A stretch of DNA of 64,000 bases from IMG/VR virus record IMGVR_UViG_3300023175_000005, positions 1-64,000 of that record; one strand, given 5' to 3'. A program made the position numbers and the translations under genes. Every line of letters starts with the position of its first letter. Position 1 is the first letter of the stretch. The notes beneath the pieces were generated by a model. The model was not told the DNA's origin. It saw only the letters and a list, made by a program, of their open reading frames with translations, and did not search any database. Shown in pieces: positions 6,601-36,366 of the stretch.

Positions 6601-6613
6601 ATCTTTTTTTGAC

Positions 6614-21056: not shown

Positions 21057-21501
21057 GTTCTTTAGCCAATTCTTTGAGTTCTTTTTTTGTAGATATTCTA
21101 GCAAGTAATTCTACCTCGTCCATCTTCATTTCAGGATATATTTGCGATAGCATTTTTACTGCCTTGCTACTATCATCCTTTTTCTTTTTCAATCCAATCC
21201 AAGGATGAAATTCTTTTTTTCCTGTTTTACCTGCGACACATAAAAGCTGCCATTGCAGTTTAATATGGTTAGTACCGCCTAGCACATTCCAATTTTTGTT
21301 ATAGTATTCATTAACTTTGAAAACTGCTAATGCTTGCTTTTCATAACTGCCTTTGACACTGCTTATATAACGATTAAGATTCCACAAGTCAAGTTTAATA
21401 TCTTTCTTACCATCGTCGCCGGCAGCATCATAAAGTTCTTTAATTCCCATATCAATAGCAGGAATTAACTCCTTAAATAAATCTAGTTCTTTGTTTGCCA
21501 A
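21034..21501 (-). CDS. Probable clamp loader small subunit (gp62-like)
   Basis: NRYIS...VNEY...LQWQLL...HPWI pattern, size, replication context. Confidence 0.55.
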   Translation of the reverse strand: MANKELDLFKELIPAIDMGIKELYDAAGDDGKKDIKLDLWNLNRYISSVKGSYEKQALAVFKVNEYYNKNWNVLGGTNHIKLQWQLLCVAGKTGKKEFHPWIGLKKKKDDSSKAVKMLSQIYPEMKMDEVELLARISTKKELKELAKEHGVEYKP

Positions 21502-22157
21502 AGTTCAACATCCTCAGGTGAGTTTATCTCTACACCATTAAATTGTACACTAGAACAATGGATTTGCCAACCATTTTTTAACCAACGTAATTGTTCAAGA
21601 CCCTCTAGTTCTTCTTCTATAGGAACATCTAATGTTGGATATTGTTCTAATGCTTCTCTTGTATATCCATATATTCCTATATGCCAATCGCCATATCCAG
21701 TTGTTCCTCTGCCAAACCATAATGCACGATCACCAGTTCTAATAAGTTTGACACTATTAGGATCGTTTTTCATTTCATCTGGCATTTCTGTATAAGCAGT
21801 TACTACATTATAATTTTCTAATTGTTGTTTTACAGATAATATTATATCCTCTGTAATATCGGGCATATCACCTTGTACATTTATAAAATGTGTGTAGTCT
21901 TTTAATTTTTCTTGTCTTAAAGATATACCGCATCTTTCAGTTCCATTCATTGCATCATCAGTGTAAATTACGTTAGCATAGGGAATTTGGTGTGCAACTT
22001 TTCTACTATCTGTTATAACATATGTATCAATACCTGTTGCAGTACACTTGTTGTAAACTCTATTTACTAGCGGCACACCATTTAACATTGCAAGTGGTTT
22101 GTTTGGAAATCGTGTGCTGCCTATTCTAGCGGGTATAAGAATAGCGTACGATGTCAT
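21483..22157 (-). CDS. kdsB: 3-deoxy-manno-octulosonate cytidylyltransferase
   Basis: IPARIGSTRFPNKPL, NGTER, NVQGD, HIGIYGY, LEQLRWL. Confidence 0.95.
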   Translation of the reverse strand: MTSYAILIPARIGSTRFPNKPLAMLNGVPLVNRVYNKCTATGIDTYVITDSRKVAHQIPYANVIYTDDAMNGTERCGISLRQEKLKDYTHFINVQGDMPDITEDIILSVKQQLENYNVVTAYTEMPDEMKNDPNSVKLIRTGDRALWFGRGTTGYGDWHIGIYGYTREALEQYPTLDVPIEEELEGLEQLRWLKNGWQIHCSSVQFNGVEINSPEDVELWQTKN

Positions 22158-22890
22158 ATACCACCTCCTCAAAATCATCTAGTCGAAGCATATTCGGACC
22201 GTCGCTTGGTGCGTTATCAGGCAGTTTGTGAACTTCGAGGAAGAAATTTGATATCCCGAGAGCAGCCCCGCTACGACTGAAGCCAGGCACAAGATCACGA
22301 TTGCCGCCACTGCTAGTACCCTGTCCTCCGGGTTTTTGGGCAGCGTGAGTACAATCCAACACGATAGGAACAGGAAGATTGTTGAGCATCCAATCAAGGC
22401 CGCTGTAATCAACAACAAGGGTGTTATATCCAAAACTTGTTCCTCTTTCTGTGATCCAAACTTCTTTTGCTTCCGCACACTTACTTAGTATTCCTTTGAC
22501 ATCCCAAGGCGCTAAAAACTGTCCTTTTTTAATATTTACAATGCAATCTGTTGCACATGCTGCTTGAATTAAATCTGTTTGACGACATAAGAATGCAGGA
22601 ATTTGTAAGACATCTACAATGTGTGTCAAGTATTGTATTTGATCTCTTTCATGTATATCTGTTACAATTTTTAGATTAGGAATTTCTTCTTTCATATCAA
22701 GAAAATCTCTAACTGTATCATGTAAGCCTCTGCCTCGCTTACCATCTACACTTGTGCGATTTGCTTTATCAAAACTGGCTTTGAAATAATAATCAATACC
22801 TAGTTTATTGCATACACGTTTACATTCTTTTGCAATTTCTAAACTTTGTTCTAGTGTTTCGTGCTGACACGGACCTGCAATTATTCTCAT
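22126..22890 (-). CDS. kdsA: KDO-8-phosphate synthase
   Basis: IAGPC, KASFDKANRTS, QIPAFLCRQTDL, KKGQF, ERGTSFGY, SDGP. Confidence 0.97.
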   Translation of the reverse strand: MRIIAGPCQHETLEQSLEIAKECKRVCNKLGIDYYFKASFDKANRTSVDGKRGRGLHDTVRDFLDMKEEIPNLKIVTDIHERDQIQYLTHIVDVLQIPAFLCRQTDLIQAACATDCIVNIKKGQFLAPWDVKGILSKCAEAKEVWITERGTSFGYNTLVVDYSGLDWMLNNLPVPIVLDCTHAAQKPGGQGTSSGGNRDLVPGFSRSGAALGISNFFLEVHKLPDNAPSDGPNMLRLDDFEEVVYDIVRYSYTR

Positions 22891-23159
22891 TTTGCATCCT
22901 TTATAATATAATACATTGTAACTGTTTTATCAAGTTGCTTCATCAAACTTTTATTTTGCATTGCTAATTCACATAATTCTTTCCAACTACCATAATCCAA
23001 CAACTCGCCTTGTGCTCGTGCAATTGCTCCAGGATCGCCACCAACAATCCATTTTGGATATTTGTTATATGGTGCATCTCGATACCTTGCCCATACAACT
23101 CCGTTAGTACGTTCGTATATTAGTGCAGCACCGGGAACAAGCTTATGTTGCTGAGCCAA
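22887..23159 (-). CDS. Hypothetical protein
   Basis: Coupled ORF. Confidence 0.7.
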   Translation of the reverse strand: MAQQHKLVPGAALIYERTNGVVWARYRDAPYNKYPKWIVGGDPGAIARAQGELLDYGSWKELCELAMQNKSLMKQLDKTVTMYYIIKDAK

Positions 23160-23487
23160 CAGTCTTCCTTACTATATCATTATGATTAAACTCTGCCCAG
23201 TATAGTTCAAATGCTACACCGTCTTCAAGTCCTTCAAACTGATGAATTACACCTGGCTTGACTTGCGTAAAGTCTCCTGGCCCAAGGATAGTTTCATCTA
23301 TTAGATCATAATCTTTTTGCCATACACGAACAAGCATTTTGCCTGACTCTACAAAGAAGCCATTCCATTTAAATCTATGTTCGTGCTCGCTACATTTGTA
23401 GCCACCTTTAAACTCAATACGGTGAAACTCTAACACACCGTTAGCGTGGATAAGTTCAGTTTGTCCCCAAATCTTTCCTGCTTTCAT
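23143..23487 (-). CDS. Cupin-domain protein (sugar isomerase-like)
   Basis: CSEHEH...VKPGVIHQF; AGGAG RBS gives ATG 23487. Confidence 0.8.
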   Translation of the reverse strand: MKAGKIWGQTELIHANGVLEFHRIEFKGGYKCSEHEHRFKWNGFFVESGKMLVRVWQKDYDLIDETILGPGDFTQVKPGVIHQFEGLEDGVAFELYWAEFNHNDIVRKTVGSAT

Positions 23488-23497
23488 TTTAGTCTCC

Positions 23498-24004
23498 TTA
23501 TAATAATTTTCCGTGATCAATAATTTCACTTTGTCTACTGATATCTTTAACAAAGAATGCACACAGGCTGTTTTCTTTTTCCTCGATAGGTACAGCAAGC
23601 AACTGACCTGATTTCATTTTAGGAAAAAACCATTTTACATCATTATAAAAGTTTACAGTTTCTATATGTAAAAATTGAGGCAAAGTGCCTGTAATAGGAT
23701 TGAAAACAAACGCTTCAAATCCTCTATCATTTAAACTTGTTAACGGTAACACTTCTAAGTCGCTACCTGCTTGATTACATCCTACAGCAATGCACCAATC
23801 TAAAGGCATTGTGACTTCGCTTTCGCCTATTTGTAAAACTATAGCAGGTGAATTAAAAGATTCTAAAAAAATCATAGGATTAAAAAAGAAGTCCGGATCT
23901 GCTGGATTGCTATTATCTAGCACTGCAAATCTAATAGCATCGTCTACAGTATTAGGCACATTATTCATATCAAAGGTTGTATTGTCTAGTGTAAGTATTC
24001 TCAT
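23498..24004 (-). CDS. Conserved hypothetical protein
   Basis: 168-aa ORF next to UvsW. Confidence 0.75.
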   Translation of the reverse strand: MRILTLDNTTFDMNNVPNTVDDAIRFAVLDNSNPADPDFFFNPMIFLESFNSPAIVLQIGESEVTMPLDWCIAVGCNQAGSDLEVLPLTSLNDRGFEAFVFNPITGTLPQFLHIETVNFYNDVKWFFPKMKSGQLLAVPIEEKENSLCAFFVKDISRQSEIIDHGKLL

Positions 24005-24005
24005 T

Positions 24006-25469
24006 TTATTTCCAATCTACTTTTTCTATAGTGAAAGGATATTGTGCTTCCTTATAGAATTTTTTGCGCTGTGTTAAATGTCTCTTTGCAAATTTGCACG
24101 TTGAAGTGATATCCCAAATTTGTACAAAGTCTTTGTCCTTTGCCTTTCTTACGCCTCTGCCTATAGATTGAATAACTCTTACGAATGATTTGCCTGGTTC
24201 TATGAGAACAAGATTAAAAATACGAGGAATATTAATGCCGACGGCAGCAACGCCATACGTAGCAATGACCACGTGATTTGTTCCTTCGTTAATTTCGTCA
24301 TATGCGTCCTTTCTATCTTTTAATTTTACATCGCCTTTAACAAAAACTGATCCTGGAATAAGTTCTTGTAACATTTCGCCTGCACTAATTCTATCTACTA
24401 GAATAAGTGTATTGCCTGATTCTTTTACACTGTTTAATATTTTGCCTATATATTCTACTCTTTCTTTATTTGTAACTAGATATTTTAATTCTTCTTGATA
24501 GTTACTATGTGCAACAGTATCCATTAGTTGCACAATATTAACATGACACTGCGCAAGTACGCCCTTGTCTTGTAATTCTTTTGCTGATATTTCACCGATA
24601 ACTGGACCTAAACTTGCATGTATACTTTCAAATTCAAACTTTTCTTTAGGTATAGTTCCTGTTAGTCCCCAACGTATTGGTGCATTTTTTAAGTTACGTG
24701 TTAATAAATTTTTCAATACTTCCGCTTTTGCTTGATGAACCTCATCAACAATAACGGTGCTCACACCATCTAAGAACTCTGCAAGCGATAGTACTGCGGA
24801 ACCGTCCTTGTGCTTCTTGTCAAGTATATTCAAACTTTGCCAAGTGCAGATGGTGTGAGTCTTACCCAACTCTTTTCTATCTCCAAAATAAACCCCTACA
24901 TCAAGTCCGCAATTAATGTAATCTTCTTCTGTTTGTGTTACAAGAGATTTGTTTGGTACAATAACAAGACTGCGTCCATACTTTTCACTCATATGTGATA
25001 GTGTAGCAGTTGTAATAGTTTTGCCAGCGCCTGTTGCAATCTGTTGTAGGCTTTGTGGATTGTTTGCAAAGTTGTTGATTGCTTCTACTTGATAGTCACG
25101 CAGAATAATTTCTTCACCTTCAGCAGGATGTCCTTTGGGCCAACGCACACCTTGGTCAGCCCAGTAGCGTTCCGTTACTTGATCAAAACTTAAATCAATA
25201 GGATGTCGTCTGTCTTCAATGTCAACTATTTGAACATTGTTTTTTGCAAGCACTTCGGTAACAGTATCTAAATGATTAACATAGCCAGTACCGCCGATAC
25301 CAAAGAAAGCAACTTTGCCGTCCCACCTGCCAAGTTTATACTGTGGCATATATCGTGCGTATGGCACTTCAAACTTGAGAGCGTTGGAAAGTTTACGGCG
25401 TACATCTACGTCTAAACCTTCTAGTTTGATGTTTACTTCATCTTCAATAATTAATTTGCAACTAGCCAT
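24006..25469 (-). CDS. uvsW: SF2 helicase UvsW-like
   Basis: LRDYQ, ATGAGKT, DEVH, GLTGT, QSIGRGVR. Confidence 0.92.
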   Translation of the reverse strand: MASCKLIIEDEVNIKLEGLDVDVRRKLSNALKFEVPYARYMPQYKLGRWDGKVAFFGIGGTGYVNHLDTVTEVLAKNNVQIVDIEDRRHPIDLSFDQVTERYWADQGVRWPKGHPAEGEEIILRDYQVEAINNFANNPQSLQQIATGAGKTITTATLSHMSEKYGRSLVIVPNKSLVTQTEEDYINCGLDVGVYFGDRKELGKTHTICTWQSLNILDKKHKDGSAVLSLAEFLDGVSTVIVDEVHQAKAEVLKNLLTRNLKNAPIRWGLTGTIPKEKFEFESIHASLGPVIGEISAKELQDKGVLAQCHVNIVQLMDTVAHSNYQEELKYLVTNKERVEYIGKILNSVKESGNTLILVDRISAGEMLQELIPGSVFVKGDVKLKDRKDAYDEINEGTNHVVIATYGVAAVGINIPRIFNLVLIEPGKSFVRVIQSIGRGVRKAKDKDFVQIWDITSTCKFAKRHLTQRKKFYKEAQYPFTIEKVDWK

Positions 25470-26680
25470 TAATAGTTTCTTCCTGCAAAATATGAAACAC
25501 GCTCATCGTGAAGTATAATTAAATCGCTTATACTAGTGCAATATGTTTGTACTAATGTGTGAGGTCTATGAGACGTTATGCAATACACGCTAGAAGGTTT
25601 CCAATCTGTTTTTAACAATAGTTTAGGTAATTTGTTTTTAGCAATATACACAACTTTTGTGTTTTTGTCAAGCCAGTTGTTTAAGGTGTTTTCTGAGATG
25701 TAATTATTAAGATCTGATTGTGCTGAATTTTTTTCTACACGGAACAAAATAGTTTGATCTGAATCAGCAAAAACATATTTTAGACTCTTATGTACTTTGG
25801 TTACTTGATTGTAAGCCTCATGTTCATCGATTAAAACTAAAAGTGGAAATCTTTCTAATTGTATTAAAGATTCTACAATAGAATCAAAGTTATGTTGGCT
25901 AGGCTGTATTAATACACTTGTACTATTTCTATACGCAATTTTTTCTATTAAATGCCCATCAGAACTTTTTTCTGGCAAGTGATATTGATGTATAAATCTG
26001 TTATCATATGCTTTTAATTCTGTAAAAATTTTATCATCTAAATTTGCACTTTTTGGTGCATTTAAAATTTTACCATCTTTGTAATAGGGCAAATATTTAT
26101 GAATACCTTCTTCTTTTATATGTACAATTTCTTCGTATGCATCTAAAATTTCTTGTTGTATTGAAAAGTTTTTTGATTTAAATACAGACACTAATTCAAA
26201 GATATTGTTTTCTGTAAGTCGTACAAAGTGTACTTGTGTAGATTTTATATGGTGTTTTTGTTGATAGGGAATGTTACAACTATCTAGTGCAACTATTAAT
26301 TTTTTAGAAAAAGGAAATCTAATTTTCATCCACTTCCATTTTTCTTTGCTAGACTCATATACTTGATCTACGTAAACATCTTTAGTATCAACAAGTTTAA
26401 TACTTTGTTCTCTGTTAATTGTCCGCAAAGGATACTTCAAACTTTCTACTACTGTTTGAAAGTTTGTTATACCACTCTCAATAAATTGATCTTGCATGTC
26501 AAACATTTTTTGTTTCATAAGATTAAACTGTCTATCAGTAAGTGCAGTGCCTTGAAAGGTTTGTCTAGCAATACTATAAATAATCTTAGAATCAGACGGA
26601 TTTATACTGTATTTAAAATCTGTTTGTTTTAATCCTGTGACAAGATGCAATAAATCTTCAATGTTTTCAACTGTATCCAT
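25469..26680 (-). CDS. Hypothetical protein
   Basis: 403-aa ORF with a sigma70 promoter close to the ATG. Confidence 0.75.
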   Translation of the reverse strand: MDTVENIEDLLHLVTGLKQTDFKYSINPSDSKIIYSIARQTFQGTALTDRQFNLMKQKMFDMQDQFIESGITNFQTVVESLKYPLRTINREQSIKLVDTKDVYVDQVYESSKEKWKWMKIRFPFSKKLIVALDSCNIPYQQKHHIKSTQVHFVRLTENNIFELVSVFKSKNFSIQQEILDAYEEIVHIKEEGIHKYLPYYKDGKILNAPKSANLDDKIFTELKAYDNRFIHQYHLPEKSSDGHLIEKIAYRNSTSVLIQPSQHNFDSIVESLIQLERFPLLVLIDEHEAYNQVTKVHKSLKYVFADSDQTILFRVEKNSAQSDLNNYISENTLNNWLDKNTKVVYIAKNKLPKLLLKTDWKPSSVYCITSHRPHTLVQTYCTSISDLIILHDERVSYFAGRNY

Positions 26681-26696
26681 GTTATTAATATAACAT

Positions 26697-27548
26697 CTAT
26701 AGTTTGTTTGTCAAGTTTTTAAAAGGTAATCCGTTTGCAATTTCAGTAATTGTGTATTCTGTCCAAGCATAATCGTTACGCCATTGTATTCTATCAGGCA
26801 TTAAAGGATTTTCTATATCATGTAAAAAGTCTATATCATTGGCTACAGGATAAGCAAGACTAGAAGGACTAACAAAAGCAGGAACACCTTGAAGTATAGA
26901 ATGACAGCCAGGATTACTACTATGGCTAATAGTAGCCCATATGTTATCAAAGCCCATATCAAAATCATCATAAGTCCCGGCAATGTGTCTTGGCTCCTGT
27001 CTTACTACATATCGCAAACCACGTTCTATATGTTCAAGTCTACATCTTGGATGAGGACGGAATATAATAGGACGATTGGTATGTTTGCGTACTTCGTCAT
27101 ATGTATTTAAGAACCAATTGCTCATACGTGGCATGTCTTGCCATTGTAGACTTTTATCATGCTGTCCGCATATCAATATGTATTCGCCGTCTTTGCGCCA
27201 AGGCTTTAACGCCATTCCAAATGCACTAGCACGATGATTAGAGTTATCTGGTTCACCAAAATAAGCGTCTCTGTTTATACCGTCTAATCCTACTTTCCAA
27301 GTTGTGCCTCTTTGTATACCACCAACTTCTAAAACAACAACGGGTCTATTTTTTCTTTTTGCTGCTTCCCAGATTTTTTGGTTAGGAGCCATCCTGCCAT
27401 TGAATAAGACACTCCATATGACATCGATACCATCAGTGCTATTATCAACACACTTATGACCATTAGCAATAGCGCCAACACGAAAGGCATCAAAAATAGG
27501 CTTAGAATTAAGTGCGCCATAATTTGTCCATAAATTAAATAGGGCCAT
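26697..27548 (-). CDS. KpsC/KpsS-like (capsule polysaccharide biosynthesis family) GT-B protein
   Basis: LEVG, ILICGQHDKS, IFRPHP, SHSSNPGCHSILQGVP. Confidence 0.7.
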   Translation of the reverse strand: MALFNLWTNYGALNSKPIFDAFRVGAIANGHKCVDNSTDGIDVIWSVLFNGRMAPNQKIWEAAKRKNRPVVVLEVGGIQRGTTWKVGLDGINRDAYFGEPDNSNHRASAFGMALKPWRKDGEYILICGQHDKSLQWQDMPRMSNWFLNTYDEVRKHTNRPIIFRPHPRCRLEHIERGLRYVVRQEPRHIAGTYDDFDMGFDNIWATISHSSNPGCHSILQGVPAFVSPSSLAYPVANDIDFLHDIENPLMPDRIQWRNDYAWTEYTITEIANGLPFKNLTNKL

Positions 27549-28446
27549 CCGGTCCTAGTTTCCTTGCTATTGTGCCGTAATCTATTTCGTCTTTTAATCC
27601 TGCCTTGTAATGTTTCATATAAGGGTCTAGAACGCTTCTAGGCATACATGTTTTGTGTACATGTTCAGGATTTAAATCTAGCATTTGTGCTCCTGCGGCT
27701 TGCATTACCTCTACAGTTTTACCATAAACTTCTCCGTCATAAAATCTACGGATATCTTTATGATCGTCATTGTAGTAGATGTTTTTATATGTTTCCTTAA
27801 AATCGTTAAATTGTTTATGATTTTTATTTAGAATAAAAAATCCTGTTTCACAACTAAACCATCTTTTGCCTTCTACATTATGCACTACGCCTAAGTGAGT
27901 GCTTAGATATCTGTCGTCTGAAAGTAAATCTAACAATTGAGGGTGTATAGGTGCATTGATAATTAAGTCTGCATCTAACCAAATTAGTCTATCACAATCA
28001 ATGTTTTCCATTGCATCAATAATAGTAAAACCTTTTTTTGCAAATGTTGCAACTTTTTTATTTACAGGCCACCAGCGTTCTTGAAACTTATTATATTCTT
28101 CTCCTAAGTCAAAGCCTCTTAATCTAATTCTAGATTTAACTTTAGGACGAAAAGCTTCATTATACAATTCAAAACGTATTCCTTTATTAAGATTATGGAT
28201 TACACTTTTTAAAAAGTATCTTCCGTATTTGTTGAAATACTTATGATCCATACTACTGATTGCAGTAAAACGTTTAGCACCTCCACGTTTATTTTGTACA
28301 ACTTCATTTACAATATGTTTAATCCATCTTTTCTTTTCAAATGTATTAATAGATACATGTCCTTCTCTACATACATAAACTATTTCTTCATATTTTACAA
28401 CCACACCTTTATCGTAAGTTGTATTTGGTTGCCAAATGTGTGCCAT
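27535..28446 (-). CDS. GT-A glycosyltransferase with N-terminal CBM5/12-like module
   Basis: WQPNTTYDKGVVVKY...YVC; LIWLDAD; CETGFF. Confidence 0.75.
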   Translation of the reverse strand: MAHIWQPNTTYDKGVVVKYEEIVYVCREGHVSINTFEKKRWIKHIVNEVVQNKRGGAKRFTAISSMDHKYFNKYGRYFLKSVIHNLNKGIRFELYNEAFRPKVKSRIRLRGFDLGEEYNKFQERWWPVNKKVATFAKKGFTIIDAMENIDCDRLIWLDADLIINAPIHPQLLDLLSDDRYLSTHLGVVHNVEGKRWFSCETGFFILNKNHKQFNDFKETYKNIYYNDDHKDIRRFYDGEVYGKTVEVMQAAGAQMLDLNPEHVHKTCMPRSVLDPYMKHYKAGLKDEIDYGTIARKLGPDGPI

Positions 28447-29285
28447 TATATTGCTCCCCAATATGCTTCTTGTCGTTTTTCTATCAAGTCTTTAGATAAA
28501 CTTTTTCCAGTATTCTTTCTTGCGCCTTTCATATGGTCTATCCAGCGTCCTAATTCTGTATTAATTAAAGGATGGCCGCCGCCACCTGTGTGTGCAGTTT
28601 TCATCATAAATCCTTCGGTATAATCATAAACATTAGGATGATCTATTTTGATTCTGTTTAGTATTATTCCAAACACATAACTGTCATGCCATTCTTCCAT
28701 TTGAAATATACCTGTTTCTGCATTTTCGTAAACATGCTCAAATTGACGTAAAAATTCTGTACAAACTTGGTTGTTTAGATTCATACCATAAAACCCACAC
28801 TCTGGCCATGTTGCTGCTTTTTTACCTCTGCCTACATATGTCATCCATTTATCATCTGGCAACAGTTCTTTAAATTGTTCGTATGACCACGGACTATGCA
28901 CGTATGTATCTGCATCCATCCATACACACCAGTCATCACAACGTTCGGCTGCGTCAAATACTGCATATACTTTGTTAGCAAATCTAACTGCGTCCCATTT
29001 AAATTCTTTATGATGGTCTCTTGGACGCTTTTGAGGCCATGGACATTTGCCATTTGCCTTGGGAACATTCTTCCAAGTTTCTTTAAACTTGTTTAGTTTT
29101 GGTAACACTTGTTTTGCATCTAAAACTATAATTTGATCAGTATCTTTGACAATAGGATTACAGTCTTCTGCATATACATACATTTTAATTTTTTTGTCTA
29201 CATTATCTTCAAAAGAAGTTATAAAGCGTTGACCATATTTTTCTAAACCTTCTTTATGAAATGTTGTTAGCACATTTATATTCAT
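28446..29285 (-). CDS. GT-A glycosyltransferase
   Basis: FANKVYA, VWMDAD, ECGFY, WHDSYVF, DHMKG. Confidence 0.75.
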   Translation of the reverse strand: MNINVLTTFHKEGLEKYGQRFITSFEDNVDKKIKMYVYAEDCNPIVKDTDQIIVLDAKQVLPKLNKFKETWKNVPKANGKCPWPQKRPRDHHKEFKWDAVRFANKVYAVFDAAERCDDWCVWMDADTYVHSPWSYEQFKELLPDDKWMTYVGRGKKAATWPECGFYGMNLNNQVCTEFLRQFEHVYENAETGIFQMEEWHDSYVFGIILNRIKIDHPNVYDYTEGFMMKTAHTGGGGHPLINTELGRWIDHMKGARKNTGKSLSKDLIEKRQEAYWGAI

Positions 29286-30196
29286 TTTAAATAATCCTTC
29301 ATTACTGACCACGCTTTACCCGATTGTAAATCATCAAAGTTATAATGACTCATTGCAATCTTTTCAATCCATTGTTCTCTCACAGGCATCAAAGGATATT
29401 CTATTTTACTAAGATCAAAATTTGCAACTTTATATGCTTGACTTTTGTTAGGTGACGGGTCTGTTACAAACACAGGAATTCCATCAATTGCTGCTGCTAC
29501 ACCAGGAGAACTATTATATGTTACCACTGCCCAACATTTATGAAAGTCTGCAAGTATACTTGCTTGTTTACTTATTTTTACACCAGGTATGTTTATTTTT
29601 TGCCATCTAGTGTTTTTCTTATCTCCAGGATGTCCTCGTACAATAATTTGTCTATCAGTATGTTGTCTTAATTGATGTATAGTTGCCATTAGCCATTTAT
29701 TAGCATCTTGTCCGCCCATACTCCAACCGCCGTTACGTTGCATACAAATAAGAATATGTTTACCAGTTTTACGCCAAGGTTTCAACCCAATATTTAGATC
29801 TCTTTGTATTTGCTGCCATCTTTCAGGATCTGGATTATCAGTAAAATATTGTCCTGTGTTAGGAAATACATCATTTAAACTAAATCTCAAATACGATTTA
29901 GTATTGCCGGGATCTCTATAAAGAAACAAATTACTATCAATTGCTAGTGTGTGTTTGCCTATTGCTTTTTGGTTATCTATTATAAGCCGTCTAAATTGTA
30001 GATGTGGTGAACGCTGGCTTCCAGGATGCACCCAGCCTTGTATGACAGCAAGATCGGAAGGCTGCCAGTGTTTAGTGTGAATTTGTTCGCTCCAAGGCTT
30101 AGGCACACCTTCGTGGAAATTATCAAGAACTTTAACCTTTTCTTGGTTTTTATTTCTTGGCGGTATGCCTGCATAATAAACTCTAACTTTTTTCAT
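29282..30196 (-). CDS. KpsC/KpsS-like GT-B protein
   Basis: ILICMQR, IVRGHP, VTYNSSPGVAAAIDGIPV. Confidence 0.7.
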   Translation of the reverse strand: MKKVRVYYAGIPPRNKNQEKVKVLDNFHEGVPKPWSEQIHTKHWQPSDLAVIQGWVHPGSQRSPHLQFRRLIIDNQKAIGKHTLAIDSNLFLYRDPGNTKSYLRFSLNDVFPNTGQYFTDNPDPERWQQIQRDLNIGLKPWRKTGKHILICMQRNGGWSMGGQDANKWLMATIHQLRQHTDRQIIVRGHPGDKKNTRWQKINIPGVKISKQASILADFHKCWAVVTYNSSPGVAAAIDGIPVFVTDPSPNKSQAYKVANFDLSKIEYPLMPVREQWIEKIAMSHYNFDDLQSGKAWSVMKDYLK

Positions 30197-30953
30197 CTAC
30201 CAACATCCTGTATGCTTTGCCACTCTTAAGTTCATCTGTATGGAATTGTCCGTAAGCTAAGTGACATGCCCATTTATATATCTTTTCTTCCTCTTGTATT
30301 GTAGGGTTTTCTAATAAACTTATATCTTGATCACATACAACGTCTGCTGCTGTTGGTGCTAGTGTAAAGGCAGGTACCCCATATAACACACTTTCTACTG
30401 CTGCTATACTTTGATATGTAACTAATGCATGGCAATTGTTTAAATCATCATATATTGTTTTTATGATGCGTTCCGGTCTAGATGCTTTGTCTCTAATTAC
30501 TATAGGTCGATCTGTGTATTGTTTGATTTTTTCTACTGTTTCTCTAACCCAGTTGTCTCTATCTATGCCGTAAAACTTACAAGGTTTTTCACTTGGTGTT
30601 ACTAACAATATATGTTTGCCTTTTTTAGGTTTATGTATTTCTTGCCCTAGTCTTCGCCATCTATCATCAGGTCTATCTATAATATGCTTGTGCTGTAAGT
30701 CGTTTTTTACAATTCTATGCCAAACTTTCCAACCTAATGGATTGCCTGGAGATTTATAATTTCCTATATACCCACTATCCATGTAATAAAACTGTCTACC
30801 TGTTTCCCAACATTCTTTTATTAATTTTCTTTTTGCCATAGATCTAAATATAATATCTCCCTTTGTTCCGGGTGATGTAACAATATCTAATCCAGATCCC
30901 TTTGCAAATAAATTAATAAATTGATCAGTTTTATTTTTAGAGAGACATATCAT
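30183..30953 (-). CDS. KpsC/KpsS-like GT-B protein
   Basis: YMDSGY, IVIRDK, VTYQSIAAVESVLYGVP. Confidence 0.65.
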   Translation of the reverse strand: MICLSKNKTDQFINLFAKGSGLDIVTSPGTKGDIIFRSMAKRKLIKECWETGRQFYYMDSGYIGNYKSPGNPLGWKVWHRIVKNDLQHKHIIDRPDDRWRRLGQEIHKPKKGKHILLVTPSEKPCKFYGIDRDNWVRETVEKIKQYTDRPIVIRDKASRPERIIKTIYDDLNNCHALVTYQSIAAVESVLYGVPAFTLAPTAADVVCDQDISLLENPTIQEEEKIYKWACHLAYGQFHTDELKSGKAYRMLVDEKS

Positions 30954-31620
30954 CCATCATCTCGTATAATTCGTTTTTCCATAGATCGGCAAATTCACAA
31001 TTACGATAATTTTCAAACCATGGACCGCCTTCGGTATAATGAATTAATTTTGGAACATCAATGTCATCGTAAACACCAACAAGATAATTCCAAGTATGAT
31101 CTAATTCTCCAATTTCTTCATCATTTAACCAACTAAATCTGTGTAAGTATGCTCCGTTAATTTCTGGATCATTTACTAAGTCTTGTGTAAGTGTAGCATT
31201 ACTAGGATGTGAACAGTTGAACAACATAACACTTGACCAATTTTTACGTGGATAGATAGTTTGTTTTTGCCCGTCCATCTTTGTACCTTCTTTAGGTGTG
31301 TAATCATGCTTTACACACATTACAGCATATTTGTCATCTGCTTGATCGAATAGTTCTTTAATGTCTGTTGTAAGGATCATGTCGCAATCCATAAACAGTG
31401 CCCAGCCTTTAAAATCTGTAAGTTCAGGGATTAGAAATCTTGTAAATGTAAATTCTGTACTAGCAAGTTTATCTGCCTTTCTTTTATACCAGCCCGAATC
31501 TCTTAATTCTTGCTGTTTTAGCGGGCGTACATCCGCTCCTGGCTGTTTGCTTAGTATACTATGCTTGCAAACTTGATATGCAATATCTTCTCTAGTATCA
31601 TAACCTACAAATATCTTCAT
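30937..31620 (-). CDS. GT8-like glycosyltransferase
   Basis: STEFTFTRF, FMDCD, RKNWSS, WNYLVG, HYTEGGPW. Confidence 0.85.
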   Translation of the reverse strand: MKIFVGYDTREDIAYQVCKHSILSKQPGADVRPLKQQELRDSGWYKRKADKLASTEFTFTRFLIPELTDFKGWALFMDCDMILTTDIKELFDQADDKYAVMCVKHDYTPKEGTKMDGQKQTIYPRKNWSSVMLFNCSHPSNATLTQDLVNDPEINGAYLHRFSWLNDEEIGELDHTWNYLVGVYDDIDVPKLIHYTEGGPWFENYRNCEFADLWKNELYEMMDDMSL

Positions 31621-32390
31621 TAATCTCTTCTTTCAATATCATCTTCAGTTAGTTCGTCTCCCATCCATACTTCGATAACTTTTGCAGTAATATCGCCTAC
31701 ATTTGTGGCTTTGTGCCAAGTGTTTACAGGGATATCAATACTGTCTCCTGAGTAGTATGTTTTGTTTTCTCTATCCCCATTTGGATATTCTAAACTCATC
31801 ATTATTGTACCTTGTACAATATGCCAATGCTCTGAGCGTACTAAGTGTCTTTGATCGCTAAGGCTTTTACCAACGTCAAACGCAAGTTCTTTTACTTGCC
31901 AGCCGCCGTTTTTATCTAAAATCTTATAAGTGCCCCATGCACGTTGAGTGATTGGTTTATCCCAATTACTAAGAATCCAACTACTTGAATTTTTCTTATT
32001 TGTGCCTCCTACGCCCCAAACAAATTCTACATCTTTTCGATCGCCATATGTTTTCCATTCTGGAGTATTTGTAGCACTGTCTCTATCGCCGCCGTTTGCA
32101 AATATAATTTTAGAATTTTCAGTTGTTGCCATAGTTTTAAAAATTGCACCACATGCACTGTTATCGCTGTCATCAAATGCAACAATTCTATCAACAAAAG
32201 AAAGTTCGTCTATAATTGCTGCACGTTCTTCAAACGGCATAAAAGGTCTTCCTTTTTTACGTGTTAACCATTCGTCACTATTAATTCCAACAAATAACTT
32301 ATCACCTAGTTCTTTTGCTGCTTTCATATAATCAATATGACCTGAATGTAGTGGATCAAAACCACCTGTTACTAATACAATTTTTTCCAT
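31620..32390 (-). CDS. HXGH cytidylyltransferase fused to an MPI type-II cupin
   Basis: TGGFDPLHSGH, FANGGDR, KNSSS; RAWG, LSDQRH..RSEHW. Confidence 0.88.
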   Translation of the reverse strand: MEKIVLVTGGFDPLHSGHIDYMKAAKELGDKLFVGINSDEWLTRKKGRPFMPFEERAAIIDELSFVDRIVAFDDSDNSACGAIFKTMATTENSKIIFANGGDRDSATNTPEWKTYGDRKDVEFVWGVGGTNKKNSSSWILSNWDKPITQRAWGTYKILDKNGGWQVKELAFDVGKSLSDQRHLVRSEHWHIVQGTIMMSLEYPNGDRENKTYYSGDSIDIPVNTWHKATNVGDITAKVIEVWMGDELTEDDIERRD

Positions 32391-32425
32391 ACTGTATTTA
32401 TATACGTATATAACTTAAAAAAAGT

Positions 32426-32995
32426 TTATTGGTTGTATCCTAGTATATCAAAGTCTTTGTAAAAATATTCTTTGACGATTTCTTTACTAGATTTATCATA
32501 ATCATTTTGCCATATACTTTTTTTATTACTTTTATTACTTAAAGGCAAATCTGCTTCTATATTCAAGTATCTTTTTACTGGAATTATATCTTCGTGAATG
32601 TTTTCTAAATAACATAAGAATTTTACTTTATGATTAAAAAATTCTGTTTGGGTTTTTCCCATATCACCTTGCATCCAATTAGTATTTTGGATAAACCAAT
32701 TGAATCCTTTTCTTTCATAATCTAGCCAGTACGACCATCTATTAGGTTTATGGCTCCATTTTTTTGCTATACCTACATGATAATAAAACCAACTATGAAT
32801 TCTTGCATATGGATTCCTTACAACAACAAAATGATCTTTTACAGTATATTTTTTTTCTATATCTAAAAGAGTATCATGCTTATCTCCTACATCATCGAAG
32901 GAAATATTATTTTGAATCCATCCTCTTACACTGGTGCCTCCTGCTTTAGGTATGTGTAAAAAATAAATATCTTTTTTCGGTATATATAATGCCAT
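32426..32995 (-). CDS. Sulfotransferase family 2
   Basis: FLHIPKAGGTS (PAPS loop), VRNPYARIHS. Confidence 0.85.
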   Translation of the reverse strand: MALYIPKKDIYFLHIPKAGGTSVRGWIQNNISFDDVGDKHDTLLDIEKKYTVKDHFVVVRNPYARIHSWFYYHVGIAKKWSHKPNRWSYWLDYERKGFNWFIQNTNWMQGDMGKTQTEFFNHKVKFLCYLENIHEDIIPVKRYLNIEADLPLSNKSNKKSIWQNDYDKSSKEIVKEYFYKDFDILGYNQ

Positions 32996-33558: not shown

Positions 33559-34317
33559 CTATTTACGCCTATTTTTACGTAAAAAATCATTTATTTGCTG
33601 ATGTGTCATGTCAAATTTTTCTTTAAATCTTTGAAAATATTCTTTTTTATTTGCTTTGAAATATTCTTTTTGTGTATGCTCGCCTCTACCTTCTCTAAAT
33701 GTGCTATTTCTATACCAATCTATACTTAATAATGGCGTAGTAAATTCATCCCAACCTGCATTTAAATTATACATACGCATATCTTCAGTTGCACCTTGAC
33801 CGTGATGATATGTAACATCATACCAGCCGTGTTTTTTTCTTTTTAATTCACTAATATATTTTGTATTCCATATAGTAAATATAGGCTGTGCAAACATAGG
33901 ATTTTTAATAAAATTATCAACGCCTATTTGTTCAGGTATAGCAACATCTATCCAACCATCAACATTTTCTATTTTAGAATATATTGCACTCCATTTTTCT
34001 TTCTTTAGAGATTTTGTAGTCTTTACAATAGTTTTTTTATAGTTTTGTTTTAATAATGTTGCACTAGTGGTAATAGTAACAAAGAAAGATTTTCTTTGAT
34101 TTATTTCCCTATCAAAAATTACTCTATAAGCGCCGCTTACTTTCCTATTTGTTGGTAATGGAATTCTAGTTTTAGGATGCATGGGTTCTTTGTCAGAACC
34201 GTTATCTAGTATATAGATATCTTCTTCTAACATTGATCTACAAAGCATACGATATATTTTATCTGTATGCTCTGGCATATTATAGTTTATGATATAGGTA
34301 TTAAAAGAGTCCGACAT
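33559..34317 (-). CDS. GT2-like protein
   Basis: IINYN, ILDNGSD. Confidence 0.6.
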   Translation of the reverse strand: MSDSFNTYIINYNMPEHTDKIYRMLCRSMLEEDIYILDNGSDKEPMHPKTRIPLPTNRKVSGAYRVIFDREINQRKSFFVTITTSATLLKQNYKKTIVKTTKSLKKEKWSAIYSKIENVDGWIDVAIPEQIGVDNFIKNPMFAQPIFTIWNTKYISELKRKKHGWYDVTYHHGQGATEDMRMYNLNAGWDEFTTPLLSIDWYRNSTFREGRGEHTQKEYFKANKKEYFQRFKEKFDMTHQQINDFLRKNRRK

Positions 34318-35605
34318 TGTTTAGTACATCAAAAGGATCTGAGCCAAAGGTTGCTTCAAATTTTACAAGCATTTCTTTTTTAAGTGCTGCTTTTACTTCT
34401 TCAAAAACAAACTGCCATTTTTCTGCTGGTATGCACACAACACCGTCAGGATCACCAAAAATAATATCATTGTTGCGTACTCTTACACCGTTAACAGTTA
34501 CTGGCATATTCATTTCTTCAAGTGTACCTTCGTATCTAATATCGTCAGGCATTCTTGTATGTGCAAACAATGGTAAACCGATTTGTGTAACCCTATCTAC
34601 ATCACGTGTGGGGCCATCTACAACAACACCCACTGCACCGCTTCTATATGCAAAGTGTGCGTTTAAATCGCCAAAGTATGCTTTGTCTTTTACATCTGTG
34701 GAAACTATAATTACATCACCTGGTGCAACAAATTCATAACTTCCTAAGGCGTCAAATATACCTTCCCAATGTGGTAATGCAGGGTCTTTTTGATCTTGTG
34801 GTAATTCTTTTAATTTAAGCGTTTTTGCATATCCTAAAAATGTACCGTTGTTCATAGATTTTATTTCACTACTTAAAAAATGATCAATACCGTTTTCTTT
34901 GCAAATATCACTTAACAAACAACTACTAATACTTTTGCTTAACATTTTAAGTTGTTGTACTTTTTTTGCTCGTTGTCCTGCACAAATATCTCTTGCAAAT
35001 ACAAGATCTTCTTGATTGTTGATATCTACAAGTTGTAAAGGTGTGACAGGCCATAGCATTACATTATCTGTATAACGTTTTTCAACAGGATTTCCGTTTG
35101 TTTTTACAGCATAAAAACTCATTGCTTCGATAATATGATTTGGTAAGTCTACACTGTTAGGAATACTATTACCATATGCAGGTTGATGATCGTCCCATAA
35201 GTATAATTTTTGCTCAGATACAGCAACTAAACTTGTAGTAGGACTTTCCTTTAAATCTCTTAATGCAGGATCAATTACAGATTTATCTATAAACGGTGCT
35301 GTACATAATACTTGCACTACTATATCTGCATCTGTAACTCTTGATTCGTTAGCAAACATTGCATGTCCATCAGTTTTGTTGTTTGCTAGGTTAGGATCTC
35401 TATAGTGATGTTTAATCGGTAAGTCTCTTGCTAATCTGTGTAATTCTTCACTTTCACTATCTAGCCAAACCTCGTCTATTTCTTCACATTCTAATAACTG
35501 TCTTAATTTACGCTTAAACAAATACTCTCCGTCTAATACTTGTAAATTTTTATTTTCAATTCTTTCACTAGTTCCTTTTGCAGGTACAAATGCTACTGTT
35601 TTCAT
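34301..35605 (-). CDS. CMP-nonulosonate synthetase (NeuA-like) fused to RraA/HMG-aldolase
   Basis: PAKGTSERIENKN, TAPF, DIN; C-half AYFGDL, VVDGPTRD, GDPDGVV. Confidence 0.85.
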   Translation of the reverse strand: MKTVAFVPAKGTSERIENKNLQVLDGEYLFKRKLRQLLECEEIDEVWLDSESEELHRLARDLPIKHHYRDPNLANNKTDGHAMFANESRVTDADIVVQVLCTAPFIDKSVIDPALRDLKESPTTSLVAVSEQKLYLWDDHQPAYGNSIPNSVDLPNHIIEAMSFYAVKTNGNPVEKRYTDNVMLWPVTPLQLVDINNQEDLVFARDICAGQRAKKVQQLKMLSKSISSCLLSDICKENGIDHFLSSEIKSMNNGTFLGYAKTLKLKELPQDQKDPALPHWEGIFDALGSYEFVAPGDVIIVSTDVKDKAYFGDLNAHFAYRSGAVGVVVDGPTRDVDRVTQIGLPLFAHTRMPDDIRYEGTLEEMNMPVTVNGVRVRNNDIIFGDPDGVVCIPAEKWQFVFEEVKAALKKEMLVKFEATFGSDPFDVLNNVGLF

Positions 35606-36366
35606 AATTTCTCCTCTATGGTAACTTCTTTGCCTTTTTTATAGTTGCTCTTATTAGCTTTAGTCACCCAGTGTCTTAAATATTCTTTTAATTCTGTGTG
35701 CATAAAAGGTACAATACTATCAACTGCTGTTGCAAGATGTTTCAATTTAGAGCCTTTCTTTTCAGCAGTATGTATGGCATCCCACCATACACCTGTATCC
35801 AATCTCCTACTGACTTTTAATATCTGTAGGGAATTATGACACAATTTATAAAAGTCAATAACATGTTGTGTATTTTTATCTTTCATGTTAAGCATAAAAA
35901 ATCCAGTTTCTGCTTCTTTTCCTTTTACTTTGCCGCCTGCTGGAATATCAACAGAAAGTGTGTCTTCTGGTAATAAGTTTTCTATAAACTCTAAAGGTAT
36001 TTTTTTATTAGTAATTACATCACTATCTAACCATATAAAAACATCTTGTTCACATTCTTGTAATGCTGCTGTAATTACATGGCCTTTAATCCAACTAAAT
36101 TTGTATCTAGAAAATAAATCTTTTCCCTTAGGATCATGCGGTACATGTGGATATATTAATTCTAAAAATTTATCTAAGTCATTACGAACCTTTTCAAAAT
36201 CTTTTACAATCAATCTAGGATTATCAATGTCAGGTACAAACCCTTCAGCCCATAATTCTATTGAAATATTTTTAGGCCAGTATTCTAAAAAACTAGTAAT
36301 ACAATCTTTTCCAATTTGATTGTAGTACGGTTCGTGTTGTGATGTAACTACTCTAAAAGTTCGCAT
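35602..36366 (-). CDS. GT-A glycosyltransferase
   Basis: IWLDSD, AETGFF; paralogue of the 27535 and 28446 genes. Confidence 0.75.
   Translation of the reverse strand: MRTFRVVTSQHEPYYNQIGKDCITSFLEYWPKNISIELWAEGFVPDIDNPRLIVKDFEKVRNDLDKFLELIYPHVPHDPKGKDLFSRYKFSWIKGHVITAALQECEQDVFIWLDSDVITNKKIPLEFIENLLPEDTLSVDIPAGGKVKGKEAETGFFMLNMKDKNTQHVIDFYKLCHNSLQILKVSRRLDTGVWWDAIHTAEKKGSKLKHLATAVDSIVPFMHTELKEYLRHWVTKANKSNYKKGKEVTIEEKL

What the first reader, a model, noticed from the sequence alone, without database searches (positions are those of the whole stretch)
21483..30953. Phage-encoded Kdo pathway: KdsA and KdsB plus three KpsC/KpsS-like transferases
Seen: kdsA-kdsB and three paralogues with R-x-H-P-type and T-x-x-S...G-x-P motifs (26697, 29282, 30183). 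Established: KpsC/KpsS are GT107 CMP-Kdo-dependent beta-Kdo transferases. The transferases lie in an operon that opens with a late TAAATA box (32395-32400). Inference: synthesis of a Kdo-containing glycan late in infection, for virion glycosylation or host-surface remodelling.
Basis: partly seen in the sequence, partly recalled or inferred. Interest (0 to 1): 0.65.

Follow-up and report, generated by a model that had tools for sequence, protein, structure and literature searches.

The report
Phage Kdo genes, atypical Kdo-transferase paralogues
A salt-marsh jumbo phage carries two genes for making the activated sugar CMP-Kdo and three related enzymes that have the shape of bacterial Kdo-transferases but lack their key catalytic aspartate; all lie in a sugar-building gene cluster, carrying the phage's structural-gene (late-type) promoter motif, that probably decorates the virus particle or the host surface.

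Summary
KdsA (22126-22890) passes NCBI's curated cut-offs. The KdsB-like gene (21483-22178) falls below them, but its only solved relatives are KdsB. The three ORFs are true paralogues. AlphaFold models of two of them (pLDDT 95-96) match first, and only, the retaining beta-Kdo transferases KpsC (GT107), WbbB (GT99) and KrkA (GT140) before generic GT-B folds.

They are not GT107 members. There is no Capsule_synth match. All three lack the Asp nucleophile of the QXXXD motif, which is Gly, Ser or Pro instead. The third paralogue also lacks the Gln and the His-Pro.

They belong to a large unnamed family of at least 4,455 clusters whose nearest clusters are viral. About a quarter of the sampled members keep the canonical motifs.

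The pathway is partial: no KdsD or KdsC was found. KdsA-KdsB is an accessory cassette, present in 13 of 30 related loci, while the transferase module is constant.

ATAAATA is the most enriched motif upstream of genes. It precedes tail-tube and adaptor genes as well as this operon. Metatranscriptome contigs end about 25-30 bases inside the operon's first gene.

Best reading: late synthesis of an acidic glycan, probably containing Kdo, by transferases that cannot use the canonical mechanism. The acceptor is unknown; virion proteins are favoured.

The parts
22126..22890 (-). KdsA, Kdo-8-phosphate synthase (254 aa)
   Evidence: NCBIfam NF003543 scores 325 bits (cut-off 242) and TIGR01362 scores 318 bits (cut-off 314). 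Pfam DAHP_synth_1, E 6e-53.
21483..22178 (-). KdsB-like CMP-Kdo synthetase (231 aa). The ORF overlaps kdsA by 53 nt, so the true start may lie further downstream.
   Evidence: Pfam CTP_transf_3. The best NCBIfam matches are all KdsB but below their cut-offs. All 13 PDB hits are KdsB, best E 2.5e-24.
29282..30196 (-). Paralogue P0002 (304 aa), with the KpsC/WbbB/KrkA fold. It has Q153, R187-x-H189-P190, S229 and D87, but Gly157 at the nucleophile position.
   Evidence: AF2 model pLDDT 94.9. Foldseek and VIA searches. Motif columns.
26697..27548 (-). Paralogue P0001 (283 aa). It has the Q and RPHP motifs, with Ser at the nucleophile position (QHDKS).
   Evidence: It sits in the 'QS' clade, which has 99% support.
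30183..30953 (-). Paralogue P0003 (256 aa). It has the same fold but lacks the Gln, the Asp and the His-Pro (PSEKP; RDKA).
   Evidence: AF2 model pLDDT 95.8. The top 27 Foldseek hits are KpsC, WbbB and KrkA. Motif columns.
28446..29312 (-). P0004, a GT-A-like protein with a D-x-D (DAD) motif.
   Evidence: Paralogue of P0005, E 9e-18. No Pfam match. Conserved in the module.
27535..28461 (-). P0005, an N-terminal CBM5/12 module followed by a GT-A-like D-x-D domain.
   Evidence: Pfam CBM_5_12, E 5e-6, and a weak Glyco_transf_24 match. Paralogy to P0004.
30937..31620 (-). GT8-family glycosyltransferase.
   Evidence: Pfam Glyco_transf_8. phrog_28018, E 3e-56.
31620..32390 (-). First gene of the operon: a nucleotidyltransferase (CTP_transf_like, RfaE-domain-II-like) fused to a mannose-6-phosphate-isomerase-type cupin.
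   Evidence: It is always the first gene of the conserved module.
32395..32402 (-). TATAAATA, a T4-type late-promoter-like box four bases before the ATG.
   Evidence: RNA contigs end at 32361-32367, and depth is 0 at 32500-32699 in 3 of 4 runs.
23143..23598 (-). Small cupin protein, linked to KdsA-KdsB in two phage lineages.
   Evidence: Pfam Cupin_2. A homologue lies within 10 kb of KdsA in 65 of 80 viral loci, directly after KdsB in the second lineage.
34301..35605 (-). Fusion of a NeuA-like CMP-sugar synthetase and an RraA-like aldolase. It may supply a second CMP-activated acidic sugar.
   Evidence: Pfam CTP_transf_3 plus RraA-like. PDB hits to NeuA and to HMG/CHA aldolases.
32426..32995 (-). 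Sulfotransferase-like protein, just upstream of the promoter box.
   Evidence: Pfam Sulfotransfer_2. RNA contigs are nearly absent over this gene.
25469..26680 (-). P0006, a conserved 403-aa protein of unknown function between the transferases and UvsW.
   Evidence: No family match. Syntenic in most related loci.

Best explanation
The region is part of a roughly 25-kb glycan-synthesis island in a jumbo T4-superfamily myophage from salt marsh. The island spans about 14.9-37.9 kb of the window.

Shown:
- KdsA and a KdsB-type synthetase are present. Together they cover two of the four steps to CMP-Kdo.
- Three paralogous soluble GT-B enzymes have the fold of the retaining beta-Kdo transferases.
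- Two of them keep the CMP-binding R-x-H-P, the phosphate-binding Ser, the Kdo-carboxylate Gln and the general-base acid.
- All three lack the Asp nucleophile.
- The operon begins at an ATAAATA box shared with virion structural genes, and it is transcribed in situ.

Inferred:
- The host supplies arabinose-5-phosphate and the phosphatase step.
- The KdsA-KdsB cassette raises the CMP-Kdo supply late in infection.
- P0001 and P0002 transfer a CMP-activated ulosonic acid, most likely Kdo. Because the nucleophile is missing, they would do so by direct, sialyltransferase-like displacement (giving an inverted, alpha-linked product) rather than through a covalent Asp-Kdo intermediate.
- P0003 either uses another donor or is an accessory subunit.
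- Together with one GT8, two GT-A-like enzymes and sulfo-, methyl- and carbamoyl-transferases, they build a complex acidic glycan on a cytoplasmic acceptor, most likely virion proteins.
For: - KdsA and KdsB.
- Paralogy.
- Fold: P0002 Foldseek E 1.7e-8 to 1e-6 for KpsC, WbbB and KrkA, then 3.6e-5 for the next fold. VIA Z 15.1-13.0 against 11.3. P0003 gives the same ranking.
- Motif mapping: canonical family members align Q-x-x-x-D, H-P and the Glu base onto WbbB and KpsC. The window's proteins occupy the same ungapped columns.
- The site is under constraint: Q-R-N-G-G-W, R-x-H-P and D-S-N are invariant in 47 orthologues of 60-68% identity.
- No WaaA or Capsule_synth gene exists elsewhere in the record, so these are the only Kdo-transferase candidates.
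- Late class: ATAAATA enrichment of 17 against 0.59. The motif precedes the tail-tube, adaptor and virion-protein genes.
- RNA contigs from four runs cover 26741-32367 and stop there.
- No transmembrane segment or exporter is found in the island.
- In Caulobacter phage CcrColossus the family member sits between a tail gene and the lysis genes, next to a sialyltransferase-like gene.
Against: - The donor is not shown. The Asp described as absolutely conserved in retaining Kdo transferases is absent (for the rule).
- P0003 also lacks the CMP motif.
- KdsA-KdsB is missing from 17 of 30 related loci that keep the transferases.
- KdsA-KdsB occurs without this family in another phage lineage.
- A second CMP-sugar synthetase (the NeuA-like fusion) and another nucleotidyltransferase in the island could supply different donors.
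- Contig ends cannot prove a transcription start.
- Residue equivalence rests on sequence alignments that are marginal against the PDB (E 0.02-0.09), not on superposed coordinates.
- Nothing tested here identifies the acceptor.
Confidence: 0.5

Rival explanations
1. The enzymes and sugars are the same, but the acceptor is a host envelope glycoconjugate such as LPS core, O-antigen or capsule primer. This would remodel the surface of the infected cell, for example for superinfection exclusion or altered recognition.
For: The structural relatives KpsC and WbbB act on lipid-linked glycans at the cytoplasmic face. A canonical family member (P0233) lies in a cellular-looking glycan cluster with a polysialyltransferase-like gene, GT4, GT8, methyltransferases and an ABC transporter. 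Cyanophage authors interpret KdsA/KdsB as cell-wall modification genes (PMC12801897).
Against: The promoter motif is shared with virion genes, which points to late expression, when surface remodelling is of least use. No membrane protein, flippase or exporter is found in the island. In CcrColossus the family member lies in the tail/lysis region.
Confidence: 0.25
2. The three paralogues do not use CMP-Kdo. Their donor would be another activated sugar made in the island: a CMP-nonulosonate or ulosonate from the NeuA-like/RraA-like fusion, or the product of the nucleotidyltransferase-cupin that always leads the module. On this reading KdsA-KdsB is an unrelated metabolic cassette.
For: The transferase module is constant while KdsA-KdsB is variable. 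The nucleotidyltransferase-cupin and GT8 are always present. The HP motif is shared with sialyltransferases generally (PMC12887879). A KpsC homologue that transfers pseudaminic acid is reported there. P0003 has no CMP motif.
Against: The nearest solved folds are exclusively Kdo transferases. The Gln that binds the Kdo carboxylate is kept in P0001 and P0002. CMP-Kdo is the one CMP-sugar that every Gram-negative host supplies, which would explain the loci lacking the cassette. The NeuA-like fusion is also variable among relatives.
Confidence: 0.3
3. The island hypermodifies phage DNA with sugars including Kdo. This has been reported for phage DNA glycosyltransferases acting on 5-hydroxymethylcytosine.
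For: Pyle et al. (bioRxiv 10.1101/2023.12.21.572611) assign a Kdo-like adduct on cytosine to one phage GT. The island lies among replication and recombination genes: gp32-like, UvsX, UvsW and primase. In the second KdsA-KdsB lineage a thymidylate-synthase-like gene lies three genes downstream.
Against: No thymidylate-synthase-like hydroxymethylase, TET/JBP dioxygenase or C5-cytosine methylase is found in the 256-kb record. The reported DNA enzymes resemble T4 beta-GT, not KpsC. The record is only 72% complete, so absence is not proof.
Confidence: 0.08
4. One or more paralogues, especially P0003, are catalytically dead and serve as scaffolds or carbohydrate-binding subunits.
For: P0003 has lost the Gln, the Asp and the His-Pro. 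D232A in WbbB and D160A in KpsC are inactive.
Against: Each variant type forms a large, old clade. The clade lacking both Gln and His is one branch with 99% support and 24 cluster representatives. The remodelled loop is invariant among P0002 orthologues. P0003-type genes are present in 1-3 copies in relatives. The models are confidently folded.
Confidence: 0.15

Closest known systems
KpsC/KpsS (CAZy GT107; Pfam Capsule_synth), retaining beta-Kdo transferases of group 2 capsule linkers
   Same: Best structural match: Foldseek E 1.7e-8 and VIA Z 15.1 over about 250 residues. P0001 and P0002 share the Gln, R-x-H-P, the phosphate-binding Ser and the N-domain acid.
   Different: Identity is 10-13%, and none of the three matches PF05159. 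The nucleophile Asp160 equivalent is Gly, Ser or Pro. The phage proteins are single-module and 256-304 aa long. There is no evidence for a lipid acceptor.
WbbB N-terminal domain (GT99), retaining beta-Kdo O-antigen terminator
   Same: Best sequence-profile hit. The HP block, the Q-x-x-x-D block and the Glu158 block align with canonical family members. VIA Z 14.1.
   Different: E-values are only 0.02-0.06. The Asp232 equivalent is missing from the window's proteins. WbbB is larger (about 400 aa) and part of a multidomain protein.
KrkA N-terminal domain (GT140), retaining Kdo transferase of the E. coli K13 capsule
   Same: Same fold class, Z 13.4. KrkA is a precedent that this fold splits into deeply divergent sequence families (PMC12887879).
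   Different: KrkA keeps Q-x-x-x-D and His-Pro and forms a covalent adduct. The phage proteins cannot do so at that position.
Bacterial GT-B sialyltransferases with the HP motif (GT38, GT52, GT80)
   Same: They share the CMP-sugar R/K-x-H-P motif and a general-base acid. They are inverting single-displacement enzymes, which is the mechanism proposed here. The retaining Kdo transferases are thought to derive from such an ancestor.
   Different: Structurally more distant: the polysialyltransferase 5wcn gives Z 10.0. Their donor is a nine-carbon sugar.
KdsA/KdsB of Synechococcus phage S-SCSM2R
   Same: Adjacent phage-borne KdsA and KdsB lie among glycosyltransferase genes. KdsA is 40% identical.
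   Different: That phage is a cyanomyovirus. None of the KpsC-fold family lies near its kds genes.
Mycobacteriophage virion glycosylation (Freeman et al. 2023, cited in PMC12619734)
   Same: Phage-encoded glycosyltransferases decorate capsid and tail-tube proteins in the cytoplasm. This is the precedent for the favoured acceptor.
   Different: The enzyme families and sugars differ, and nothing is shown for this phage.

Membership tests
KdsA (Kdo-8-phosphate synthase) | Score above the curated equivalog cut-offs (NF003543, TIGR01362) | tested here: met
   325.1 against 242 bits, and 317.7 against 314 bits.
KdsB (CMP-Kdo synthetase) | Score above the curated cut-offs (NF003952, TIGR00466) | tested here: not met
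   155 against 193 bits, and 121 against 155 bits. However, every NCBIfam hit and all 13 solved relatives are KdsB, so this is a divergent KdsB-type enzyme.
Complete CMP-Kdo pathway (KdsD, KdsA, KdsC, KdsB) | Arabinose-5-phosphate isomerase (SIS domain) and Kdo-8-P phosphatase present | tested here: not met
   No SIS or KdsC match in the 256-kb record, which is 72% complete. Cupin proteins linked to the cassette are an untested candidate for the isomerase.
Retaining beta-Kdo transferases (GT107, GT99, GT140) | Modified GT-B fold of KpsC, WbbB and KrkA | tested here: met
   For the P0002 and P0003 models, the top 27-28 PDB matches are only these enzymes. Z is 13-15 against 11.3 for the next fold. 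P0001 is assigned by homology.
Retaining beta-Kdo transferases (GT107, GT99, GT140) | Asp nucleophile of the Q-x-x-x-D motif (absolutely conserved; its Ala variant is inactive) | tested here: not met
   The residue is Gly157 in P0002, Ser in P0001 and Pro in P0003. Canonical relatives in the same ungapped columns align onto the Q-x-x-x-D of WbbB and KpsC. The Gly is invariant in 47 orthologues.
Retaining beta-Kdo transferases (GT107, GT99, GT140) | Gln of Q-x-x-x-D (binds the Kdo carboxylate) and the (K/R)-x-H-P CMP motif | tested here: inconclusive
   Both are present in P0001 and P0002 and absent in P0003 (P...; R-D-K-A).
Retaining beta-Kdo transferases (GT107, GT99, GT140) | General-base Glu in the N-terminal domain (WbbB Glu158) | tested here: met
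   The aligned column is Asp or Glu in 126 of 129 relatives and in all three paralogues. The bridging alignment to WbbB is marginal (E 0.02).
GT107 as a sequence family (Pfam PF05159 Capsule_synth) | Significant match to the family model | tested here: not met
   No match even at E 10 for the three proteins or in the six-frame genome search. Only 4 of 129 relatives match, best E 9e-5.
Retaining beta-Kdo transferases (GT107, GT99, GT140) | Uses CMP-beta-Kdo and gives a beta-Kdo product | not testable with these tools
   Requires enzymology and NMR.
T4-type late transcription unit | TATAAATA-like box enriched upstream of genes and shared with virion structural genes | tested here: met
   17 observed against 0.59 expected. 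The box precedes both tail-tube genes, the adaptor and the virion-protein genes, with the identical context ATAAATAcagtATG.
T4-type late transcription unit | Mapped transcription start and late timing; a gp55-type sigma factor | tested here: inconclusive
   RNA contigs end at 32361-32367 and upstream depth is about 0, but contigs cannot prove a start or timing. gp55 was not searched for.
Phage DNA glycosyl-hypermodification systems | An enzyme that creates the hydroxymethyl-pyrimidine acceptor (TS-like hydroxymethylase, or C5-methylase plus TET) | tested here: not met
   No PF00303, PF12851 or PF00145 match in the record. The record is incomplete.

The most novel reading that the evidence does not exclude
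The three paralogues represent natural derivatives of the double-displacement beta-Kdo transferases that have lost the nucleophile. Gly and Ser at that position are also the substitutions that convert retaining glycosidases into glycosynthases (from my own knowledge). On this reading the paralogues would have reverted to single-displacement chemistry, making alpha-linked Kdo (or a related ulosonic acid) from CMP-beta-Kdo. They would form a large family, so far seen mainly in phages, that builds Kdo-containing glycans on virion proteins late in infection.
Probability: 0.22. Interest if true: 0.8.

Novelty: new variant of a known kind. Interest (0 to 1): 0.62.

Why it matters
Retaining beta-Kdo transferases are the only glycosyltransferases shown to use a covalent Asp-sugar intermediate. 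Three CAZy families are known, all from bacterial capsule or O-antigen synthesis.

This work finds a fourth, much larger sequence family with that fold. It has at least 4,455 clusters at 50% identity, no Pfam model, and at least 576 IMG/VR stretches for one subtype alone. In most sampled members the nucleophile has been replaced, yet the site remains under strong constraint.

That gives a natural experiment on how this mechanism can be gained or lost. It also offers a set of enzymes for making Kdo glycosides.

For phage biology, the finding points to complex acidic glycans made by aquatic jumbo phages and pelagiphages. The genes carry the structural-gene promoter motif, so the glycans are probably made late. 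The Kdo supply genes form a mobile booster cassette. Kdo-bearing virions would be new if they were shown.

Tried and rejected
- Megablast of the region against cultured phages found no match.
- Pfam, PHROGs and NCBIfam gave nothing for the three paralogues, P0004 or P0006.
- Sequence searches of the PDB with the cupin and with ORFs 33559-34317 and 35602-36366 gave nothing significant. The idea that the cupin replaces KdsD therefore stays a lead.
- The search for related loci in bacterial genomes with the family alignments failed because no stretch was conserved enough. The single genome scan was then spent on KdsA. It gave only matches of 48% identity or less, to scattered bacterial MAGs and genomes, mostly Campylobacterales (Helicobacter, Hydrogenimonas, Sulfurospirillum), and no host hint. 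The family's range in cellular genomes was therefore not surveyed; one canonical member lies on a cellular-looking contig.
- The ESM Atlas structure library was unavailable.
- P0002 alone as a query for viral loci found only 4. An orthologue alignment was needed.
- I rejected treating the bare TAAATA hexamer as evidence, since it occurs 217 times.
- I rejected filing the proteins under GT107.
- I rejected reading the region as a complete phage Kdo pathway.
- Read laying was given 6,000 letters.
- No complex prediction was run, because no binding claim is made.

Full report
**Source and setting**

The window is the first 64 kb of a 256,558-bp IMG/VR virus record that CheckV rates 72% complete. 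The same sequence occurs in many salt-marsh metagenomes and in one seawater metagenome.

The terminase is 52% identical to that of Pseudomonas jumbo phage PA5oct. The window also encodes gp32-like, UvsX-like and UvsW-like proteins, a tail sheath and tail-tube proteins. This is therefore a jumbo myophage of the T4 superfamily, with an unknown host. From 12 to 58 kb almost all genes lie on the minus strand.

**The two Kdo genes**

ORF 22126-22890 is KdsA. It exceeds the curated cut-offs of both KDO8P-synthase equivalogs.

ORF 21483-22178 is a divergent KdsB. All its family hits are KdsB models, though it scores below their cut-offs. All 13 of its solved relatives are KdsB.

The record holds no SIS-type isomerase (KdsD), no KdsC phosphatase and no WaaA. 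The phage therefore encodes two of the four steps to CMP-Kdo and presumably relies on the host for the others.

**The three paralogues**

P0001 (26697-27548), P0002 (29282-30196) and P0003 (30183-30953) are homologous to each other. None matches any Pfam, PHROG or NCBIfam model, and there is no Capsule_synth match in the genome.

A profile of the three found 4,455 cluster representatives at E ≤ 0.001 in the 50%-identity library. With 129 of these as the alignment, AlphaFold gave a P0002 model at pLDDT 94.9.
- In Foldseek against the PDB, ranks 1-28 are all KpsC (GT107), WbbB (GT99) or KrkA (GT140), with E from 1.7e-8 to 1e-6. The next fold scores 3.6e-5.
- VIA-align gives Z 15.1-13.0 for those three enzymes over about 250 residues, and 11.3 for the next fold.
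- A separate P0003 model (pLDDT 95.8) gives the same ranking.

Sequence profiles also pick WbbB and KpsC as their only plausible PDB hits, although marginally (E 0.02-0.09).

**Why they are not ordinary Kdo transferases**

The literature defines the class by these features (PMC12887879; PMC9587256):
- Q-x-x-x-D, in which the Asp is the covalent nucleophile and the Gln binds the Kdo carboxylate.
- (K/R)-x-H-P, which binds CMP and is shared with sialyltransferases.
- Phosphate-binding serines.
- A Glu general base.

The Asp, Glu and His are described as absolutely conserved, and the Ala variant of the Asp is inactive.

A subset of the new family (29 sequences) has invariant Q, D, H and P. It aligns onto the VLQVEDDS and RAHPG segments of WbbB, onto the GQVESDAS segment of KpsC, and onto the Glu158 segment of WbbB. 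The window's proteins sit in the same columns, with no gap between the conserved flanks:
- P0002 has Q-R-N-G-G, with Gly at the nucleophile position, and R-G-H-P.
- P0001 has Q-H-D-K-S, with Ser at that position, and R-P-H-P.
- P0003 has P-S-E-K-P and R-D-K-A, so it lacks the Gln, the Asp and the His-Pro.

The general-base column is Asp or Glu in 126 of 129 relatives and in all three paralogues.

Among the 129 sampled relatives, 30 have the canonical Q/D/H triad, 33 have Q/S/H, 26 have Q/G/H, and about 25 lack both Q and H.

In a maximum-likelihood tree:
- The clade lacking both Gln and His (P0003 type) is supported at 99%.
- The Q/S clade (P0001 type) is also supported at 99%.
- The Gly type (P0002) is nested among canonical lineages.

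GT99, GT107 and GT140 all have the Asp, so its loss is most simply a derived state. This is an inference, because the tree is unrooted.

The changed site is not decaying. Q-R-N-G-G-W, R-x-H-P-G-D and D-S-N are invariant in 47 orthologues of 60-68% identity.

**Genomic context**

The paralogues lie in a conserved module:
- nucleotidyltransferase-cupin
- GT8
- P0003 type, in 1-3 copies
- P0002 type, in 1-3 copies
- GT-A-like P0004/P0005
- P0001 type
- P0006
- UvsW

This module recurs in IMG/VR. At least 576 viral stretches encode P0002-type proteins.

KdsA-KdsB is a two-gene cassette inserted between two small genes downstream of the module. Of the 30 loci that reach that point, 13 have the cassette and 17 do not. 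One relative with 63% identity also lacks it.

Conversely, at least 115 viral stretches encode close KdsA relatives. A second lineage carries KdsA, KdsB, a cupin and a nucleotidyltransferase with none of this family within 10 kb.

The link between the cassette and the transferases is therefore real in this phage's lineage but not obligatory. That fits a supply booster for a sugar the host already makes. It fits an unrelated donor equally well.

The island also encodes:
- a NeuA-like synthetase fused to an RraA-like aldolase;
- GDP-mannose dehydratase;
- FkbM-type and other methyltransferases;
- a sulfotransferase;
- a carbamoyltransferase.

None of the island's proteins has a predicted membrane segment.

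**Expression**

TATAAATA at 32395-32402 is real. There are only 8 copies in the genome, but ATAAATA is the most enriched 7-mer within 40 nt upstream of ORFs, with 17 observed against 0.59 expected, ahead of Shine-Dalgarno words.

It precedes both tail-tube genes, the head-tail adaptor and several virion-protein genes. The tail-tube gene and the first gene of the operon share ATAAATAcagtATG.

Contigs from four salt-marsh metatranscriptomes match 26741-32367 almost perfectly. They end at 32361, 32361 and 32367, and depth is zero at 32500-32699 in three of the four runs. That internal contrast argues against DNA carry-over and for a transcript boundary near the box. Contigs cannot prove a start or a time of expression.

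**The acceptor**

The acceptor is not identified.
- For virion proteins: the late-type promoter, the soluble enzymes without an exporter, the CcrColossus homologue sitting between tail and lysis genes beside a sialyltransferase-like gene, and the mycobacteriophage precedent.
- For host glycoconjugates: the biology of KpsC and WbbB, and a canonical family member on a cellular-looking contig beside an ABC transporter.
- For DNA: a report of Kdo-like cytosine adducts made by other phage glycosyltransferases. However, no hydroxymethylase, TET or C5-methylase was found here.

**Comparison and novelty**

Phage KdsA/KdsB has already been reported (cyanophage S-SCSM2R). The transferase-like family is annotated as hypothetical in the cultured phages that carry it, namely Caulobacter giant phages and Pelagibacter phage Mosig. 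My searches found no paper describing it.

The family works like, and is folded like, the retaining Kdo transferases, but it fails their defining catalytic test. I file it as a new variant of a known kind.

Noticed in passing
window 34301-35605 (-): A 434-aa fusion of a NeuA-like CMP-sugar synthetase domain with an RraA-like (HMG/CHA-type pyruvate aldolase) domain. It could make and activate a second 3-deoxy-ulosonic acid by an unusual aldolase route. It is flanked by two ORFs with no detectable relatives.
   Followed up: partly
L051 9998-13052, and about 30 further loci among L018-L088: A second phage lineage carries a compact module of KdsA, KdsB, a small cupin and a CTP_transf_like gene, followed directly by a thymidylate-synthase-like gene. 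The recurring cupin link suggests a cupin-type sugar-phosphate isomerase standing in for KdsD. The TS-like neighbour raises the possibility of DNA hypermodification in that lineage.
   Followed up: partly
window 32390, 51999 and 57692; genome 225394 and 228111: Five genes have ATAAATA exactly four bases before the ATG and no Shine-Dalgarno sequence. This implies leaderless or near-leaderless late mRNAs. Three more genes have a five-base spacer (42760, 58524, 90410).
   Followed up: partly
L105-L183 (IMG/VR relatives): The number of family members per module varies from 2 to 6 among related phages, through tandem duplication of the P0002 and P0003 types. This suggests rapid diversification of the glycan.
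   Followed up: no
window 27535-28461 and 28446-29312 (-): Two paralogous GT-A-like proteins with a D-A-D motif and no family assignment. One carries an N-terminal CBM5/12 carbohydrate-binding module.
   Followed up: partly
window 14868-16328 (-), 36440-37414 (+), 37411-37971 (-): The island also includes a carbamoyltransferase, a GDP-mannose 4,6-dehydratase (on the opposite strand, with its own ATAAATA box 29 nt upstream) and an FkbM-type methyltransferase.
   Followed up: no
window 6514-6690 (+): Two adjacent tRNA genes: Leu(TAA) and Arg(TCT).
   Followed up: no
L185 8001-8957: A canonical (Q-x-x-x-D, H-P) family member lies on a 71-kb cellular-looking contig. Its cluster also holds a polysialyltransferase-family gene, GT4, GT8, several methyltransferases and an ABC transporter, so the family is not purely viral.
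   Followed up: no
window 22126-22178: The kdsB ORF, read from its first ATG, overlaps the end of kdsA by 53 nt. Family alignments begin at residue 10-11, so the real start is probably further downstream.
   Followed up: no
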